Shown: piece after piece, positions 3,400 through 61,377 of the stretch
Position numbering within the stretch: position 1 is the first letter of the stretch
Layout of the letters: each line of letters opens with the position of its first letter
DNA from: Podarcis tiliguerta
Lineage: Eukaryota
DNA: 64,000 nt
Reading direction: 5' to 3' (one strand)
NCBI GenBank assembly: GCA_965153285.1
Contig: OZ229116.1
The notes under the pieces: generated by a model
The model's database searches: none
Told to the model about the DNA's origin: nothing
What the model saw: only the letters and a program-made list of their open reading frames with translations
Program-made: the position numbers and the translations under genes

Positions 3400-3619
3400 A
3401 ATGACATTCATGTACTGGTTTGTGCGAGAAAAGGGGAAAACACTTCAAACTAAAACGTTTAGCTATACAGTTCTGCTTTCTTAATATTTTTTTTAAAAAA
3501 TGTTTCTGAACTTGAGCAGAGGCCAGATTATGTGGTCATGAAGGAAAGCTGTCCATAGTACATCAAGGTAATCTCTGAACAAAAGAATTATTATTCTGCC
3601 AGACATTAAAAGGTCTTAC

Positions 3620-4322
3620 CTGTGCACTTGTAGTCTGAAGCTACACCTTTAAGGACCGCATCAAACACAGATATTTCCACTCTCTGCTTTCTATGATGAC
3701 AGCTTAAGATCAAAGAAGGTTGAGATACGACAAGGTGCAAAAATGGTTCTAACTGCAAGTCACTAGTTCCCCTGCGACCAGGCTGTCGAACGATAGTTAT
3801 GCCCAAGGCTTGCCTAGCGGATGATCTTGTGGAAGCATGAAGACTTTCAAGAGATAGAAGACCTGCTTTTTTCCCAGAAGGCAGTGAACTGTTAGCATTC
3901 AATAGGTCATCTGCTGTTACAGATGAAATGCCCGCTCCGCTGGGCTTCTTGAAATCGTGCTCAACTCTCAAGTTTGCTTCAGGAAGGGTTAATGAAGTTT
4001 TGGCTGCTTTCTCTCCATCTTTCTGATCTTCCTGCGATTTTGATTTAGGTATGGTGGCACATGAGTAAGTCATAAAGGATATTCGGCTTGCTGTAATAAA
4101 AATATCAAAGGGAATGAAGTTCAGGTTCTTCACGATAGAAGATTGCCGAGAAGGACGGGCAATGCGGTGATGGCTGGTACCACTGTGTTGTTCTATTTGG
4201 ACTATTCTGATTTTAACACTGTCACTGCCAATGCCACTGTCTTGGGCTCCACTGTAACGTGAAGATGTTTCAGTCATGCCTCCATCAGACGTATCCATTT
4301 TTTTCTGTTCCTGTTTGGAAAC
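3620..4322 (-). CDS. VPS13B: VPS13B coding exon (exon 34 equivalent), 703 nt, phase 0/1
   Basis: VSKQEQKKMDTSDGGMTETSSRYSGAQDSGIGSDSVKIRIVQIEQ...DAVLKGVASDYKCT; acceptor ttcccag|GTT, donor G|gtaaga. Confidence 0.97.
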
Positions 4323-4692
4323 CTGGGAAGAAAAATAGCATATTAACTTAAAATAGTCATATCCTAAGTATTTCCATTTCACAACATAAAACAATTGCTA
4401 TATAAACATGAGGTCAAGAGAGAGAGGATTCTATAAAAAAAGAAACTTGCCAAGTTAACTTTTAAAATAGGAATCACTCATGAAAACTCAGCAGGTGTCT
4501 GTTCCAGAGAAATGGTGACTCATATTTAATGACATGCTAGTGAAAGATGTGGCAGGAGGAATACATGTTTCCTACGTTCAAACTAATTTGTTTTTCAGAC
4601 CATTTAGGAATTCAAAAGATAGTGTGTCAGCCAATTAAAGATGTTTTAACTGATCAGCTGCCTTTCAAGTAATTAATTATATTTAAATAACA

Positions 4693-7176: not shown

Positions 7177-7492
7177 NNNNNNNNNNNNNNNNNNNNNNNN
7201 NNNNNNNNNNNNNNNNNNNNNNNNNNNNNNNNNNNNNNNNNNNNNNNNNNNNNNNNNNNNNNNNNNNNNNNNNNNNNNNNNNNNNNNNNNNNNNNNNNNN
7301 NNNNNNNNNNNNNNNNNNNNNNNNNNNNNNNNNNNNNNNNNNNNNNNNNNNNNNNNNNNNNNNNNNNNNNNNNNNNNNNNNNNNNNNNNNNNNNNNNNNN
7401 NNNNNNNNNNNNNNNNNNNNNNNNNNNNNNNNNNNNNNNNNNNNNNNNNNNNNNNNNNNNNNNNNNNNNNNNNNNNNNNNNNNNNNNNNNNN
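7177..7492. other. Assembly gap (316 N)
   Basis: Run of N. Confidence 1.
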
Positions 7493-33304: not shown

Positions 33305-33381
33305 TTAGTGGTACAATACCTCAGCCTTATCAGGTGCTGTATATATTCACCTGGAAGTACTGAGGTTGAGTTTCACTGAAC
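33305..33381 (+). ncRNA. MIR875: pre-miRNA mir-875 (5p about 33315-33336 AAUACCUCAGCCUUAUCAGGUG; 3p about 33350-33370 CCUGGAAGUACUGAGGUUGAG)
   Basis: Hairpin (ACCTCAG..CAGGTG pairs with CACCTG..CTGAGGT) closely matching remembered human mir-875; antisense within a VPS13B intron, as in human. Confidence 0.9.
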
Positions 33382-33426
33382 ACAAGCTTCCTACTTACTC
33401 TGTGGATGTTATTTTGATGTCGGATG

Positions 33427-33523
33427 AAAGACAGAACATCCATAGTGTGTTTGATAAGCTGACATGGGACAGGAGTTCTTTTTTCGCTGTTGTGTCAGTT
33501 TATCAAACCCATACGTGGATATC
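33427..33523 (+). ncRNA. MIR599: pre-miRNA mir-599 (5p about 33450-33471 UUUGAUAAGCUGACAUGGGACA; 3p 33489-33508 GUUGUGUCAGUUUAUCAAAC)
   Basis: Stem GTTTGATAAGCTGACAT pairs with GTGTCAGTTTATCAAAC; 3p arm identical to remembered human miR-599; lies 45 nt downstream of mir-875. Confidence 0.92.
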
Positions 33524-47657: not shown

Positions 47658-48105
47658 TACATCCTTTAACAACTGCTTGCATCTTTATGCATGCCTGAAA
47701 CTCGTATGTTATGTAGATATAGACAGTGTATGAATCCACTTCAACCACTGATTTGACACAGTAGAGCTGAGCACTGAGCGAAAGGCCAAAAATATGCACA
47801 TATAACAAAAGCACAGTAGTCCTTTGCCACAAGTGTTTCCCTGGAAAGGTTAACTAGAAGAAACCTGGAGAGGTCACTGCAGAGGTAGCTACCCTGCGCT
47901 TACATGTATTCTATGACCGGAAAGGCAGGCAAAGCTTTTTTGGACTTCTAAAGGATTTTCTCTAAAATTTGCAAATCAGTAAGACTGGAGAACAAGCCAA
48001 TGAGGACCCTTCATATATATATATAGTGGAGACAGCATTTTCATGAACAACAGTATCCAAGAAAAATAAGTTTATTGTATTAATATAAGGTGGAGAATAT
48101 AGTAC

Positions 48106-48514
48106 CTTCAATATTGTGCTGCAATTCCTCCATTTTGGGGGAAAAGATTCTGATTACCCCAGTATTGATATAAATAAGCGGCAAGTTCCGAGATGTGAGA
48201 ATATGAGTCCTCATGGGTTGGCCTGGTGATTTTCTTTTTTCTTTTTGGCTTCTTGGCAGTTTTGCCTGAAATATACTTGCAATTGCATTGAGAAAAGGAA
48301 AACAGAGGACAACATCAAATGCCTGAGCCGAGAGAAGAATCTCATGAAGGAAATGAGGAGAACCATCAGTGAAACTTTCAGATAATTTATGCAAAGTTCT
48401 TCGCTCATTTCTTGAAATCAATTTGTGACGGACATTTTTTGTAACTGCCTTTGTGTAAGTCAGTGACAGAAATCCATGTTGCTGATGAGAACCATCCAAA
48501 AGTTTTGCAGTTGC
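48106..48514 (-). CDS. VPS13B: VPS13B coding exon (exon 29 equivalent), 409 nt, phase 0/1
   Basis: ATAKLLDGSHQQHGFLSLTYTKAVTKNVRHKL...SPKMEELQHNIE; acceptor gatacag|GCA, donor G|gtacta. Confidence 0.96.
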
Positions 48515-56444: not shown

Positions 56445-56968
56445 ATATAGTGCTACTTAACAAGTCCCCCCCCTCCTTCCCACCACTATTTTGTAACTAA
56501 ACAACCTACATCCATCATTATATTTTCACCTTCTTGCATCAAGTTTTTCCTCAAAAAATTCATCTAAATTTCATACAAACTTTTGAAAACCAGTTACAAT
56601 GCATTTGACTTGGTCAGGCACAAAAGCACGTAACAGACAAATAAGTTGGGGTGAACACTAAAAATTAAAAGTGACGAAGAGTCAGAATCTCCCTCCTGCA
56701 AGAGGAATGTATGGATTTACCATGACAGAAGTAAACAAATGTATCTTATTAGGAGTCAAAGTATTACTTGTTTAGAACATGAAAACGTGTTCTCGGTTGG
56801 TCCAAAAGTGAAGTTCAAGTCAGTTTTGATGTTCTCTGGATAGGTTTGCTGCTCCCAAGTGATTTAATTTTAATAAAAGAATACTTTTCCATGTGCTTGA
56901 AAGCAGCAGCATTGCAGAACTTCTTTGTTGATCATTTTCAGAGTTATGTCTGCCAAACTATAGTTTAT

Positions 56969-56972
<4 letters not shown>

Positions 56973-57000
<28 letters not shown>
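56973..57000. repeat. (TA)14 microsatellite, left flank of the Penelope palindrome
   Basis: Direct reading. Confidence 0.95.
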
Positions 57001-57003
<3 letters not shown>

Positions 57004-57078
57004 TTTCGTAGATTTTCACGGGTACAGGAATGCAGGTTTTGGTGTCCTCGGGTGTCTTCCCGTGTAAAAGTTGGGGTG

Positions 57079-57125
57079 TCTAGGCGACGTTTCGACGAGG
57101 TCTCACTCGTCATCTTCAGGCTGGT
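57079..57125 (-). ncRNA. Minimal hammerhead ribozyme-like motif, mirror copy (same strand as the VPS13B pre-mRNA)
   Basis: Exact reverse complement of 57820-57866; core at 57086-57119. Confidence 0.65.
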
Positions 57126-57819
57126 GCTTTCGGCTTCTTGTTACTGGAACAGAGCAGGATCTCAGTGTTTGAGTTCCTATAAATACTGTTGAGGAGGTGT
57201 GGTGTATAGCCTCCAATGTTCTGGGCAGAGGGGAGGTTCCCAGGCTAGTGTGCCTTTTCTTCTTTTGTTCCTTAATTACTTGAGGGATATCTTGAGTGAT
57301 TTCTTGAGTGATTTCCTGAATCCCACTTAGGTGGGTCATTAGGTGTGGATTAGTTGCTAAAGCCTTCGTGTCTTGAACTCTTGAACTTTGTGAAGAGTTT
57401 TTCTGAGAAGATGGCTGTACAGCACTTGGTTGTGCTCTGGCTTGGCTTCGTGTATAGGGGCGAGCTGTGGTTTTGTCCAGCTCGCCCCTATACACGAAGC
57501 CAAGCCAGAGCACAACCAAGTGCTGTACAGCCATCTTCTCAGAAAAACTCTTCACAAAGTTCAAGAGTTCAAGACACGAAGGCTTTAGCAACTAATCCAC
57601 ACCTAATGACCCACCTAAGTGGGATTCAGGAAATCACTCAAGAAATCACTCAAGATATCCCTCAAGTAATTAAGGAACAAAAGAAGAAAAGGCACACTAG
57701 CCTGGGAACCTCCCCTCTGCCCAGAACATTGGAGGCTATACACCACACCTCCTCAACAGTATTTATAGGAACTCAAACACTGAGATCCTGCTCTGTTCCA
57801 GTAACAAGAAGCCGAAAGC

Positions 57820-57866
57820 ACCAGCCTGAAGATGACGAGTGAGACCTCGTCGAAACGTCGCCTAGA
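57820..57866 (+). ncRNA. Minimal hammerhead ribozyme-like motif (Penelope type), plus-strand copy
   Basis: CTGAAGA (57826-57832), T, stem II GACGAG/CTCGTC with loop TGAGAC, GAAA (57852-57855), CGTC; predicted cleavage after C57859; helix I is only about 2 bp. Confidence 0.65.
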
Positions 57867-57914
57867 CACCCCAACTTTTACACGGGAAGACACCCGAGGA
57901 CACCAAAACCTGCA

Positions 57915-57938
57915 TATATATATATATATATATATATA
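57915..57938. repeat. (TA)12 microsatellite, right flank of the Penelope palindrome
   Basis: Direct reading. Confidence 0.95.
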
Positions 57939-60900
57939 TGGCAGCAGCTGAGGAGGCTCCTACCCTCATCGCATATATATGATTTTTTTACTGACCTAAT
58001 TGCAAAAATGATTCATTTTCATGACAAAAGATCTATCCTAACAATAGTAAACAAAAAGTTATAGAAAGAAGAAAATAACAAGGTCATGGCAAGATTTGAT
58101 ATTTATAAATTGGATTTTAAAAAACCTTTTGCATTCAGCTGTTTCAGACTTTAATCTGAGATGTAGGACTTCCTTCCAGAGAAATCTGTTTTGTGTTTAG
58201 CAGTTGGAAGTTACAGATCTCTTTGCAATGTTTGAAGAAAAAAAACAAGTGTGGGAAAAGGCTTCAAAATATATTCTGAATATATTAGAAATTCAATCAC
58301 TCTCCACAGATAATCAACTGGTTATTAATTAGGACATAACTTCACCTGTGGTAGCATTAATTAAATCCATGGAGCCTAACATAAATTAAGCATTTCAGAA
58401 ATATTCAATCATTCTCTACAGAAGGAATGAGTATGTAATTATCTACCACATGTTTAACTTTCAAGGACTCAAATCTGTGTTCCAGTGAATACAATAGCAA
58501 ACCTAGCAAATTCTCAGAAGTACACTACAAATGTTATCTGAGCCGACAACACTTCTTAGGTAATAACTGCATGAAAATATCACATAATATCTCATTGTAT
58601 GAACCAAACATTACAGAAAATCTATCACAGATGCATGGGTCATCATGCCCTTGCTTCTGAAGTATACAGAAATGTAAATTGTTCAATGTTTTTCTCATTC
58701 CTTGTCAAATATAAGAAAAGGGAAAAATGCTCAAAGATGATTGCTCAAAACATCTCCCATTTTATGGCTTAATCCAAGTTGCGGGAAGAAATGAGCAACT
58801 GCTGGTGTGACTTTAGCTGAGAATGTAAACTGCATAGAAAACTGGTTGTGCAATTAAGACAACACAAGAAAAACTGCACAGAGAAGGATTTTAATGTCCT
58901 GATTAGAACTGTCTAAAATCATGTTTCACACAAACAGCTTTGCATGCAGTTCGTGTTTTCGGAGGCCATCATAACGATGGGTCCCATGATGGGCGCCAAA
59001 CTAGCTCTTCCAACCACAAAATTGAAAGCTGTCTAGACACTTTTGGACAGACTGGGGAATAATTTCTTGCTATAAATTCTAATACTATTTTTTAAAATAA
59101 ATTTCATTTTTTATTTTTGAAATATTAGGTTCCAATCAAAATGTTAGGAATAATGACAAGAAACATTTTTATTTCTCATTCCACTTTATTTTGAATTTCT
59201 AATCCCTCACATGCATACTTAAGTAAATCTATGCCTCAATTTTCCACTTTGCATCCAAATCCATAAAAATGCCAGAATCTAGAAGGCTGAACTATTTTCC
59301 CACCCCTCCTCATGCCAAGCCCTAAAGTACACAGTTTAATTCTTTTGCCGGTTCTTGCAAATTGACCCAAAATAGTGCGTTTATTTTTCTAGGAGAATTT
59401 ATCTTTATTCATCTGGAGGAACCAAACATATAGGACCTTCATCCTTGGCCCGCATTAAAGCTCAGGGATGATCAGAGTTTTGGGCAAATTACTGCTCTGC
59501 CTTATCAAAATAACTTCTGTGTTTCTGTTCAATCATACAGCTTCCCCAAGGACTAAACACTTCCTCAACTGTTTGTACTTAAGTAAACAGTAACAAGTGG
59601 CCTGTTGTACTCTATACTACCTTCGCTCCAATACAGGGGTGGTAAAAATGATTAACTGTTTCTAAGCTCTGGTGCTTAAGCCTCTCACTCATGTTTCCAT
59701 CTTAGCCACCACCCAGTTTGAAAGTCAGGAATCCTGATAGCTTTGCACACATAAGAGAGCAGCACTCCCTATCAACCTGTCAGCATGAAAAGAATTACTC
59801 ACAGCTTAAATGTATAAATCATCTATGGATAGTATAAATAAATACTTCATATGCTATTTAATACAAACAATTGTTGGAGTGGGTCATACCACCCCAACTC
59901 CCCCCCCCCCCGCCCCAGTTCATTTATGGAAAGACTTGTATACTTGAAAGAACTTTGAGGGGTGAAACATTTCAAAATAATCATTCTGGTCCAGAAGAGA
60001 AGTAGTATGCTTTAACTGTGAAATGTCTGAAGTCAAAAATTCATACAAAGGATGCAAGCGTATTTTTATTTGACAACGTTCAAGGCTTTAAACATAAATT
60101 GTACTGGATGTATAAACAAAACAGTAACAAATTTCAGAGCAGTCCCCCTTCCAACAATAATCTAAATATATCCAGGAAATGTTACACCGTACCATGTTCC
60201 AGTAATTGAAACATAGCTAAAATATTATAAACCCTGATGAAACAAACTCTTTTGAACTTAATGAGTTTACTATACTACTATTGTTCACAATACAGAGTAA
60301 AAGAAGAAGTTAATAATATCTGAGAAACTATATTCAGATCTCAGATGATCCCTGATTCAGAGATTTATGGTCTCTAAATCTAACCTATTTTCTCATGGAC
60401 TCATTTTCTTTAATAATTTCTGCAATCAAATTCTGAACCTCTGCTGTTGTTGCTCTTGTTGCCTCCCCAGTCTAAGAGCGATGTAGGTGCTATAAACACC
60501 TCAGGTAGGTGGTACAGTCCCAGTCAAGCACCATCGCAGCCTCTTCAAGGGGGCAGAATCTATTGGTGTCCCTAGCACTATTCTCCACCAAGTGAATCCT
60601 TTGAAAGTAAATCCTGGTCCATACCAAAAGATAACCCAAAAGGAACTTTTGGCGGAGTCAAGAAAGACCTTATCCCTTGTTTGGTTTTCCCATCAGCTAT
60701 CAACTAATATAGTTGCTCTAATGTAACCAGGAAAATGCTTCTCTAAGGAAGCAGGGGAAACGTTTATTCCTTGCTCCCTTTTTAAATAAAGCTACCACAT
60801 GCTGAAGCACCCTGGAATTAGAATGCCATGAGAGAGACTGAAACATAGCTTGCTAATATGGCCTACTCAAACAAATCATTACAAAACATAGTATATTTTT

Positions 60901-61219: not shown

Positions 61220-61377
61220 NNNNNNNNNNNNNNNNNNNNNNNNNNNNNNNNNNNNNNNNNNNNNNNNNNNNNNNNNNNNNNNNNNNNNNNNNNNNNNNNN
61301 NNNNNNNNNNNNNNNNNNNNNNNNNNNNNNNNNNNNNNNNNNNNNNNNNNNNNNNNNNNNNNNNNNNNNNNNNNNNN
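61220..61377. other. Assembly gap (158 N)
   Basis: Run of N. Confidence 1.

What the first reader, a model, noticed from the sequence alone, without database searches (positions are those of the whole stretch)
56973..57938. 886-bp palindrome of inverted Penelope-like pLTRs inserted in a (TA)n microsatellite
Seen: arms 57030-57467 and 57478-57915 (438 bp each) are reverse complements around a 10-nt loop (TGGTTTTGTC). I saw no mismatch, and the two mirrored 162-aa ORFs differ only across the loop. (TA)14 and (TA)12 flank it, and only the left copy has a 29-nt 3' tail. Established: Penelope-like elements often leave 5'-truncated inverted pLTR copies with a short 3' extension on one copy. Inference: this is a very recent insertion made by fold-back or template switching during reverse transcription, possibly from an active (TA)n-targeting family. 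It would be cruciform-prone and may be polymorphic.
Basis: partly seen in the sequence, partly recalled or inferred. Interest (0 to 1): 0.8.

Follow-up and report, generated by a model that had tools for sequence, protein, structure and literature searches.

The report
Inverted truncated Penelope retrotransposon insertion
This is an ordinary, very young, dead insertion of an abundant lizard Penelope-like (Poseidon-type) retrotransposon: two truncated copies joined head to head inside a (TA)n microsatellite in a VPS13B intron, with outer ends at the two known reverse-transcription start sites of this element class.

Summary
The palindrome is real in the sequence. Arms 57030-57467 and 57478-57915 are 438 nt and 100% complementary, they sit in the only long (TA)n tract of the window, and a 28-29 nt tail is present on the left only.

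Each arm holds three parts. These are the last 36 codons of a Penelope-like element (PLE) ORF, the inter-ORF pseudo-LTR, and the first 84 nt of the next ORF. The start codon lies inside a minimal hammerhead motif, as in Poseidon_Ac of Anolis.

The untailed end falls at +84 and the tailed end at +112 from the ATG. These match the two internal reverse-transcription start sites published for Poseidon_Ac (tail about nt 85-119).

Public short-read contigs show three things:
- The family has thousands of near-identical pieces in two related species.
- Other copies end exactly at 57030 against (TA)n.
- Longer copies run on through the "loop".

Nine of the 10 loop bases therefore belong to the left copy. 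Other contig junctions look like similar head-to-head pairs cut at different points.

The asymmetric tail argues against simple fold-back of one cDNA. It favours two target-primed initiations joined by a template switch.

This scan already found the same kind of insertion at least six times elsewhere in this genome. The layout is published, so interest is low. Whether the insertion is polymorphic, and the centre junction itself, could not be checked with reads.

The parts
56973..57001 (.). Left half of the target (TA)n microsatellite, (TA)14.5
   Evidence: TRF. With 57914-57939 it is the only (TA)>=8 tract in the window.
57002..57029 (-). 'Tail': a 28-nt 3' extension of the left copy, ORF nt +85 to +112, present at this end only
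   Evidence: It is multi-copy in reads (depth in bin 56948-57011). It matches the published PLE tail of about nt 85-119 in Poseidon_Ac (PMC11167929).
57030..57476 (-). Left 5'-truncated PLE copy (447 nt from the untailed terminus), including 9 of the 10 'loop' bases
   Evidence: for the arm. In one search the loose ends 'behind 57476' (11, 1 and 17 contigs in X1, X5 and X11) carry one shared consensus, so family copies match through 57476 and then continue with element sequence. The 2 such contigs in X4 have a different consensus.
57477..57477 (.). One junction base (c) that matches neither copy's continuation
   Evidence: One search compared with the loose-end consensus: the family continues with G, and the mirror of 57468 would be A.
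57478..57915 (+). Right 5'-truncated PLE copy (438 nt), ending at ORF nt +84 without a tail
   Evidence: Other family copies end at the mirror position 57030 directly against (TA)n (16, 6 and 17 contigs).
57914..57939 (.). Right half of the target microsatellite, (AT)13
   Evidence: TRF.
57826..57859 (+). Minimal type-I hammerhead motif of the right copy: CUGAAGA, one extra U, 6-bp helix II, GAAACGUC
   Evidence: Descriptor scan: 2 hits in the window, 0 in 200 shuffles. Helix II is also predicted by folding. It meets the criteria of PMC4209133. Rfam models miss it.
57086..57119 (-). The same hammerhead motif in the left copy
57832..57915 (+). First 28 codons of the PLE ORF in the right copy; the ATG is formed by hammerhead positions A9, the extra U and G10.1
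   Evidence: Poseidon_Ac has the same arrangement.
57003..57113 (-). First 37 codons of the PLE ORF in the left copy, running through the tail
   Evidence: It is 68% identical (25/37, residues 1-37 to 1-37) to the N-terminus of P0002, a 189-aa ORF fragment from a Logan contig.
57589..57831 (+). Inter-ORF non-coding spacer (the pLTR proper) of the right copy; its mirror is 57114-57356 on the minus strand
   Evidence: It lies between the frame-1 stop and the ATG. It contains a 12-nt x 3.8 tandem repeat.
57478..57588 (+). Probable last 36 codons plus stop of the PLE ORF in the right copy; its mirror is 57357-57467 on the minus strand
   Evidence: Inference: in this frame the loose-end consensus upstream reads ..QIWLAQ.. 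about 45 codons before the stop. Poseidon_Ac reads ..KIWLPVLQ.. 50 codons before its stop. This comparison was made by eye.

Best explanation
A single, recent, dead-on-arrival retrotransposition event of a high-copy Poseidon-type Penelope-like element (PLE) placed two 5'-truncated copies head to head in a (TA)n microsatellite within a VPS13B intron.

Each copy starts at its outer end at one of the element's two internal reverse-transcription start sites. The right copy starts at ORF nt +84 (no tail). The left copy starts at +112 (28-nt tail). Each then runs back through the hammerhead-containing ORF start, the pLTR spacer and the last 36 codons of the upstream ORF of a tandem transcript.

Most likely mechanism (inferred): the element's GIY-YIG endonuclease cut both strands of the TA tract. 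Each 3'-OH primed its own cDNA on element RNA. After about 440-475 nt, one nascent cDNA switched template onto the 3' end of the other, adding one untemplated base at 57477. Each cDNA thus served as second-strand template for the other.

The insertion encodes no RT or endonuclease and cannot move. Its only likely present-day effects are a 438-bp perfect hairpin in DNA and in VPS13B pre-mRNA.
For: Shown:
- Perfect 438-nt arms in the only long TA tract of the window.
- Exactly two minimal hammerhead motifs in the window, one per arm, and 0 in 200 shuffles. [quoted passage not shown]
- The ATG sits at A9-U-G10.1 exactly as in Poseidon_Ac, and the cut site lies 25 nt after the start codon against 26 nt there.
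- The outer ends fall at +84 and +112. The published tail is about nt 85-119 and published RT starts are 111-118 nt into the ORF.
- The 37 N-terminal residues match the first 37 residues of P0002 at 68% identity, E = 4e-4 against 1.8 billion proteins. By eye, the rest of P0002 aligns without gaps, at roughly 40% identity, to the Poseidon_Ac N-terminal domain printed.
- Reads: 1735, 227 and 7146 contigs laid in runs of two species, mostly 95-100% alike. The loose end at 57030 is (TA)n in 16, 6 and 17 contigs. Element sequence continues past 57476, in one contig for more than 2 kb. Fourteen listed junction contigs join a left-arm position to a right-arm position at other truncation points.
- Both arms share a minority family variant (57421 and its mirror 57524), so they come from one source.
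- PAc protein cleaves and extends both target strands in vitro, which fits the two-initiation mechanism.
Against: - Family membership at the protein level therefore rests on a 37-aa match plus comparison by eye.
- Rfam hammerhead models give no hit. Helix I is only 2 bp, so ribozyme activity is doubtful.
- The centre junction and the filled state of this locus were not seen in reads. Contigs break at the TA tracts, and the left flank had no depth in any run.
- The junction contigs have depths of 17-125 against family depths near 1e5, so some could be library fold-back chimeras.
- The two-initiation mechanism is inferred from end asymmetry only.
Confidence: 0.85

Rival explanations
1. Same PLE insertion, but made by fold-back (snap-back) of one target-primed cDNA that copied itself, rather than by two separate initiations.
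For: The arms are identical and nearly equal in length (447 vs 438 nt) with a tiny junction. Among 14 other junction contigs, 9 have arm lengths within 25 nt of each other (permutation p = 0.0004). Self-templated turnaround would produce that pattern.
Against: A cDNA copying itself back to its 5' end would reproduce its own terminus. If the tailed cDNA were the template, the right arm should carry the tail. If the untailed cDNA were the template, the left copy could not have acquired +85 to +112. Instead the right arm stops at the family's alternative terminus, the same base at which 16, 6 and 17 other contigs meet (TA)n. The 3' bases at 57468-57477 are not paired to anything that could self-prime.
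Confidence: 0.2
2. Assembly or sequencing artefact: a fold-back chimeric read or misassembly created the second arm, and the genome holds only one truncated copy.
For: Palindromes and PLE tandem/inverted structures are known to trouble assemblies (PMC8557442). The centre junction at this locus was not individually confirmed by reads.
Against: - The palindrome lies inside a contig with different unique sequence on each side. A fold-back read would mirror the flank too.
- The two ends differ by the tail, in a biologically meaningful way.
- Nine loop bases are genuine element sequence.
- Junctions of the same type at other truncation points occur in independent short-read runs of two species.
- The scan noted the same layout at six or more other places in this assembly (these notes are unverified leads).
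Confidence: 0.05
3. A single truncated PLE copy inserted normally and was later duplicated in inverted orientation by host replication-fork template switching or repair.
For: Perfect arm identity would also follow from a very recent host-mediated inverted duplication.
Against: - The duplicated arm ends exactly at the element's alternative RT start terminus and abuts TA repeats rather than copying any flank.
- The layout recurs at many loci with different truncation points.
- The layout is a described product of PLE integration.
Confidence: 0.04
4. A fold-back DNA transposon or MITE with 438-bp terminal inverted repeats that targets TA.
For: Long inverted arms flanked by TA resemble Tc1/mariner-derived MITEs, which duplicate TA.
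Against: - The inner ends vary between loci, and in other copies the sequence continues for more than 2 kb past the centre.
- The outer ends are asymmetric because of the tail.
- The arms contain the start and end of a PLE ORF and a PLE-type hammerhead.
Confidence: 0.01

Closest known systems
Poseidon_Ac (PAc), the Penelope/Poseidon-clade PLE of Anolis carolinensis (Arkhipova 2006; Frangieh et al. 2024, PMC11167929)
   Same: - The start codon is formed by hammerhead positions A9, an extra U and G10.1.
- GAAACGUC lies about 21-29 nt into the ORF.
- The untailed insertion end is at about +84/85 and the tailed end at about +112-119.
- The target is AT-rich.
- Transcripts are tandem units, so an insertion's 3' end lies inside the next ORF.
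- The family is very young and nearly identical.
- An IWL motif sits about 45-50 codons before the stop (seen by eye).
   Different: - It is a different family. N-terminal residues 2-30 are unrelated apart from ..C..E(S/N)LR(K/Q).
- The helix II sequence differs and its loop is 1 nt shorter, so GAAACGUC is read in another frame (SKRR here, GETS in PAc).
- The spacer between ORFs is 243 nt here against 126 nt.
- The tail is 28 nt here against about 34 nt.
General PLE insertion architecture (Evgen'ev & Arkhipova 2005; Craig et al. 2021, PMC8557442)
   Same: It shows strong 5' truncation, an inverted 5'-truncated copy adjacent to another copy, a 30-40 bp tail at only one end, a hammerhead in the pLTR, and a microsatellite (TA)n insertion bias that hides target-site duplications.
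   Different: The textbook picture has the inverted truncated copy next to a full-length unit. Here both partners are truncated to about 440 nt, so nothing functional remains. (TA)n bias was stressed for Naiads, and for Neptune through the CxxC linker. Here it appears in a Poseidon-like family.
Paired opposite-strand min-HHRs in metazoan genomes (Cervera & de la Pena 2014, PMC4209133)
   Same: Two minimal hammerheads lie on opposite strands about 700 nt apart. That paper reports such pairs 100-700 bp apart and attributes them to truncated PLEs.
   Different: None of substance. This locus explains how such pairs arise.
Twin priming of human LINE-1 (Ostertag & Kazazian 2001; from my own knowledge)
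   Same: Both target strands prime reverse transcription, and the two cDNAs are then joined, giving an inverted segment.
   Different: L1 twin priming inverts a different, adjacent part of one RNA, so no palindrome results. Here both cDNAs begin at the element's specific internal start sites and copy the same segment, which gives a perfect palindrome.
Animal non-LTR retrozymes (Cervera & de la Pena 2020; Li et al. 2026 preprint)
   Same: They are pLTR-derived sequences carrying a type-I hammerhead and depend on PLE machinery.
   Different: Retrozymes are head-to-tail tandem repeats that yield circular RNAs. This is an inverted pair with ORF ends, not a tandem array.

Membership tests
Penelope-like elements, Penelope/Poseidon clade | Single ORF with a PLE-type (telomerase-like) reverse transcriptase | not testable with these tools
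   This copy is truncated to the last 36 codons. There is an indirect link only: the 37 N-terminal residues match P0002, whose remainder resembles the PAc N-terminal domain by eye.
Penelope-like elements, Penelope/Poseidon clade | C-terminal GIY-YIG endonuclease | not testable with these tools
   Only the tail of the ORF downstream of the endonuclease domain is present, and Pfam finds nothing in it. The ..QIWLAQ.. motif read from the loose-end consensus resembles ..KIWLPVLQ.. at the end of the PAc endonuclease region. This was judged by eye.
Penelope-like elements, Penelope/Poseidon clade | Minimal type-I hammerhead in the pLTR/ORF junction: extra nucleotide between 9 and 10.1, G10.1-C11.1, palindromic 15.2-16.2, long helix II, short helix I | tested here: met
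   The descriptor scan gave two hits (57826-57859 plus strand, 57119-57086 minus strand) and 0 in 200 shuffles. The criteria come from PMC4209133. Rfam covariance models do not detect it; min-HHRs have no helix III/loop 3 (PMC4209133), which may be why.
Penelope-like elements, Penelope/Poseidon clade | Insertion 3' ends at two internal RT start sites about 30-40 nt apart inside the ORF start, giving a 'tail' at one end only | tested here: met
   The ends lie at +84 (57915) and +112 (57002) from the ATG. The published tail is about nt 85-119 and published RT starts are at 111-118. Both end types are multi-copy in reads.
Penelope-like elements, Penelope/Poseidon clade | Variable 5' truncation and tandem or inverted complex insertions | tested here: met
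   This locus shows it. Fourteen listed junction contigs have other truncation points, and loose ends show longer copies. One caveat: some junction contigs could be library chimeras.
Penelope-like elements, Penelope/Poseidon clade | AT-rich or (TA)n target preference, no poly(A) tail | tested here: met
   Both flanks are TA repeats. In one search, 16, 6 and 17 contigs of other copies read (TA)n immediately outside 57030. Neither end carries an A-run.
Penelope-like elements, Penelope/Poseidon clade | Dispersed multi-copy family | tested here: met
   laid 1735 (X1), 227 (X4) and 7146 (X11) contigs on the arms, with summed word depths near 1e5, against 11-83 on the unique right flank.
Hammerhead ribozyme (catalytically active) | Self-cleavage, which needs helices I-III; min-HHRs need dimerisation or protein help | not testable with these tools
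   Helix I is only 2 bp. Folding of the region is no better than shuffles (z = -0.93). Published PLE min-HHRs cleave poorly in vitro, and the PAc hammerhead needs its protein.
microRNA / hairpin RNA gene | Match to a curated family above its gathering score | tested here: not met
   The mir-942, mir-BART3 and other hits at the centre score 22-57 bits against gathering scores of 55-100. They reflect the perfect hairpin only.

The most novel reading that the evidence does not exclude
The mixed ends (one tailed, one untailed), together with arm lengths that are more alike than chance across loci (9 of 14 junctions within 25 nt, p = 0.0004), would be an in vivo footprint of a concerted reaction. 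A dimeric PLE ribonucleoprotein would start reverse transcription on both cut strands at about the same time, and the two cDNAs would then use each other as second-strand templates. That integration route would differ from LINE target-primed reverse transcription. It would explain why PLEs so often form inverted repeats.
Probability: 0.3. Interest if true: 0.5.

Novelty: new member of a known kind. Interest (0 to 1): 0.2.

Why it matters
For the genome this is routine repeat annotation: one more dead copy of a very active lizard PLE family.

It has modest value in three ways:
1. It shows that, in a second and clearly different lizard family, genomic insertion ends fall on the same two ORF positions (+84 and about +112) that were mapped biochemically for Poseidon_Ac. 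The hammerhead-over-start-codon design is also kept, even though the motif is read in another frame.
2. A single insertion that carries one end of each type argues that both target strands prime reverse transcription in vivo.
3. A 438-bp perfect hairpin in a VPS13B intron is a possible site of instability, and of double-stranded RNA in the pre-mRNA. If it is polymorphic, it would be a convenient young marker.

Tried and rejected
- Rfam scans of 56500-58500 and of 57790-57915 at permissive E-values gave no hammerhead family, only sub-threshold miRNA-like hits caused by the hairpin and a spurious U4 hit.
- Pfam on all three forward frames of the arm gave nothing.
- The word-index protein search with the 120-aa open frame of the arm gave nothing.
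- Pfam on ten other long ORFs of the window, looking for a PLE RT to use as a query, found only VPS13 exons.
- The full-library protein search with the 37-aa ORF start gave two hits. P0001 is a low-complexity repeat protein and was rejected as false. P0002 was kept.
- P0002 then led nowhere further. Its cluster has one unnamed member from a 2989-nt Logan contig. The word search found only itself.
- A text search of papers for the hammerhead core strings found only unrelated primer matches.
- A computed alignment of the arm or of P0002 to Poseidon_Ac was left out. That consensus exists here only as printed text with no reference, so the comparison is by eye.
- Reading filled versus empty state at this locus from contigs failed. 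Contigs stop at the TA tracts, and the left flank 56500-56947 had zero depth in all four runs.

Full report
**Observation.** The repeat finder reports arms 57030-57467 and 57478-57915, 438 nt and 100% complementary, with 10 nt between them (letters read; identity re-checked by script). Tandem Repeats Finder gives (TA)14.5 at 56973-57001 and (AT)13 at 57914-57939. These are the only (TA)>=8 runs in the 64-kb window. Between the left TA run and the left arm lie 28 extra bases (57002-57029) with no counterpart on the right. The two 162-aa ORFs exist. They are simply one open frame mirrored by the palindrome, with no Pfam match and no homologue. The arm has no second copy in the window.

**What the arm contains.** Read in the sense of the right arm, the last 90 nt hold a hammerhead-like core: CUGAAGA, one extra U, a 6-bp helix II (GACGAG/CUCGUC), then GAAACGUC.

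- Rfam's hammerhead models do not report it, even in a 126-nt search at E <= 10.
- A script encoding these rules finds exactly two matches in the window, 57826-57859 (+) and 57119-57086 (-), and none in 200 shuffles.
- The two motifs lie about 700 nt apart on opposite strands. That paper noted the same arrangement for truncated PLEs.

**Comparison with the one PLE studied biochemically.** Frangieh et al. 2024 (PMC11167929) worked on Poseidon_Ac (PAc) of Anolis carolinensis and printed its consensus. They report the following for PAc:

- The ORF start codon lies at the start of helix II, and the ribozyme cut site is 26 nt after it.
- The transcript is a tandem of units.
- Reverse transcription starts internally at two adjacent sites in the beginning of the ORF, 111-118 nt in, and the "tail" is about nt 85-119.
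- The protein cleaves and extends both target strands.
- Targets are AT-rich.

Here the ATG is formed by A9, the extra U and G10.1 (57832-57834 on the plus strand; 57113-57111 on the minus strand), and the cut site is 25 nt after it. The right copy ends at +84 (57915). The left copy ends at +112 (57002). The geometry therefore matches to within a few bases.

The sequences are clearly from a different family. Helix II differs and its loop is one base shorter, so GAAACGUC is translated SKRR here and GETS in PAc. This suggests that the RNA motif, not the peptide, is what is conserved.

**Make-up of each arm.** Each arm consists of three parts:
- the last 36 codons of an ORF (frame 1 of 57478-57588);
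- a 243-nt non-coding spacer, the pLTR proper;
- the first 84 nt of the next ORF.

**Protein link.** The 37 N-terminal codons were searched against 1.84 billion representatives.

- One hit is a repeat protein and was rejected.
- The other, P0002, is a 189-aa ORF fragment from a Logan contig. It matches residues 1-37 to 1-37 at 68% identity (library E = 4e-4; pairwise E = 1e-13).
- By eye, P0002 residues 38-140 align without gaps to the N-terminal helical domain of the printed PAc protein at about 40% identity. Examples are ..LYGE..FQ.TR..EKL.., ..CRD...IP.. and ..FKTP...
- I could not compute that alignment, because PAc has no reference here.
- Further searches from P0002 found nothing.

No RT or GIY-YIG domain was reached directly, so that part of the membership test remains open.

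**Evidence from public reads.** Twenty runs hold part of the stretch. Logan contigs of four were laid on 56500-58400: X1 and X4 are organism A, X5 is organism B and X11 is organism E.

1. The arms attract 1735, 227 and 7146 contigs in X1, X4 and X11, mostly 95-100% alike. Summed depths are near 1e5, against 11-83 on the unique right flank. The family is therefore very abundant and young.
2. Immediately outside 57030, 16, 6 and 17 contigs read pure (TA)n. Other copies thus end at exactly this base, without a tail, in TA microsatellites. Depth also covers the tail, so tailed copies are multi-copy as well.
3. In X1, X5 and X11, 11, 1 and 17 contigs match through 57476 and then continue with one shared sequence (GGCCTGTGCCAGCC...). 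One of them runs for more than 2 kb. X4 has 2 contigs ending at the same place with a different continuation. Nine of the ten "loop" bases are therefore element sequence of the left copy. Only 57477 fits neither copy.
4. Fourteen listed contigs join a left-arm position directly to a right-arm position. Examples are arm lengths of 120/117, 122/126, 253/251 and 316/129 nt. These look like head-to-head pairs at other loci with other truncation points. Their depths cluster near half or once the single-copy depth.
5. Both arms share a minority family variant (57421 and its mirror 57524), so both derive from one source.

Three limits apply to this evidence. Contigs break at the TA tracts, and the left flank had no depth in any run, so the filled or empty state of this locus in other animals could not be read. 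The centre junction itself could not be seen in reads either. Some junction contigs could be library fold-back chimeras of a very high-copy repeat.

**Mechanism.** A fold-back artefact of assembly is unlikely for three reasons. The flanks are different unique sequences, the ends are asymmetric in a biologically meaningful way, and the loop is genuine element sequence.

Two biological routes remain, and the tail separates them. A cDNA that turned round and copied itself would reproduce its own terminus, so both ends would match. Instead one end is the +112 terminus and the other is the +84 terminus, and each abuts TA repeats. Each end therefore looks like its own RNA-templated initiation, one on each cut strand. 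This agrees with the two-strand cleavage and extension seen in vitro. The two cDNAs would then be joined by a template switch with one untemplated base.

Arm lengths across loci are more alike than chance: 9 of 14 fall within 25 nt (permutation p = 0.0004). This could mean near-synchronous synthesis by a dimeric complex. It could equally mean that many other loci did arise by fold-back. I give about 0.6 to two initiations and 0.2 to fold-back for this locus.

**Age.** No difference in 438 aligned sites gives a 95% upper bound of about 1.4-4.3 million years. This assumes neutral rates of 2.5e-9 to 0.8e-9 per site per year, which are my assumption, and it ignores arm-to-arm gene conversion.

**Context and consequences.** VPS13 exons lie on the minus strand at 3606-4391 and 48080-48496, so the insertion is taken to lie in a VPS13B intron. 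The scan's notes name the gene. The transcript of either strand is predicted to form an essentially perfect hairpin of about -920 kcal/mol. Editing, small RNAs and instability were not tested.

**Known or new.** Inverted 5'-truncated copies, one-sided tails, pLTR hammerheads and microsatellite targeting are textbook PLE features (PMC8557442). PLEs are active and polymorphic in lizards, with 16,208 polymorphic Penelope insertions reported in the green anole study (PMC7561263). This scan has already reported the same layout at least six times elsewhere in this genome, and follow-ups called it ordinary. These are unverified notes, consistent with what I found.

The finding is therefore a further member of a known kind. 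The modest additions are three: the exact agreement of genomic ends with the in vitro start sites in a second family, the mixed-end argument for two-strand priming, and the loop assignment.

Noticed in passing
window 56500-58400, run X5 (organism B): Organism B's right flank differs from the window at only 2 of 454 bases. Yet only 3 contigs of that run lay on the arms, all at single-copy depth. Organisms A and E show thousands. Either the family is nearly absent from B, which would be a lineage-specific burst or loss, or that run's contigs were filtered.
   Followed up: no
window 57145-57155 and mirror 57790-57800: Several independent junction contigs (57149>57799, 57151>57790, 57154>57798), and a loose end at 57155 shared by X1 and X11, cluster about 120 nt from the element terminus. 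This suggests a hot spot for the turnaround or template switch, about 35-40 nt upstream of the ATG.
   Followed up: partly
window 57832-57861 (+) and 57084-57113 (-): The hammerhead helix II and GAAACGUC box double as the first 10 codons (MTSETSSKRR), which are identical in P0002. In Poseidon_Ac the same RNA box is read in a different frame, so conservation appears to act on the RNA motif.
   Followed up: partly
window 57419-57526: Rfam reports mir-942, mir-BART3, mir-326 and other miRNA precursors at the palindrome centre, with E-values down to 1e-10 but all below their gathering scores. These are artefacts of a perfect hairpin, not miRNA genes.
   Followed up: yes
window 3606-4391 (-) and 48080-48496 (-): ORFs in these two stretches match the Pfam families VPS13_M and VPS13_N, which places the window inside a VPS13-family gene on the minus strand. 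The scan's notes call it VPS13B and mention a mir-875/mir-599 cluster at 33305-33523.
   Followed up: no
window 57275-57319 and mirror 57626-57670: A 12-nt unit (ATTTCTTGAGTG) is repeated 3.8 times inside the pLTR spacer of each arm. Contigs of organism E carry several fixed differences here (57313, 57320, 57322).
   Followed up: no
window 7177-7492 and 61220-61377: There are two runs of N (316 and 158 bases).
   Followed up: no
window 56500-56947: The left flank had zero laid depth in all four runs, while the right flank was covered in all four. The cause is probably the tool's filter rather than biology. It prevented any filled-site versus empty-site reading.
   Followed up: no
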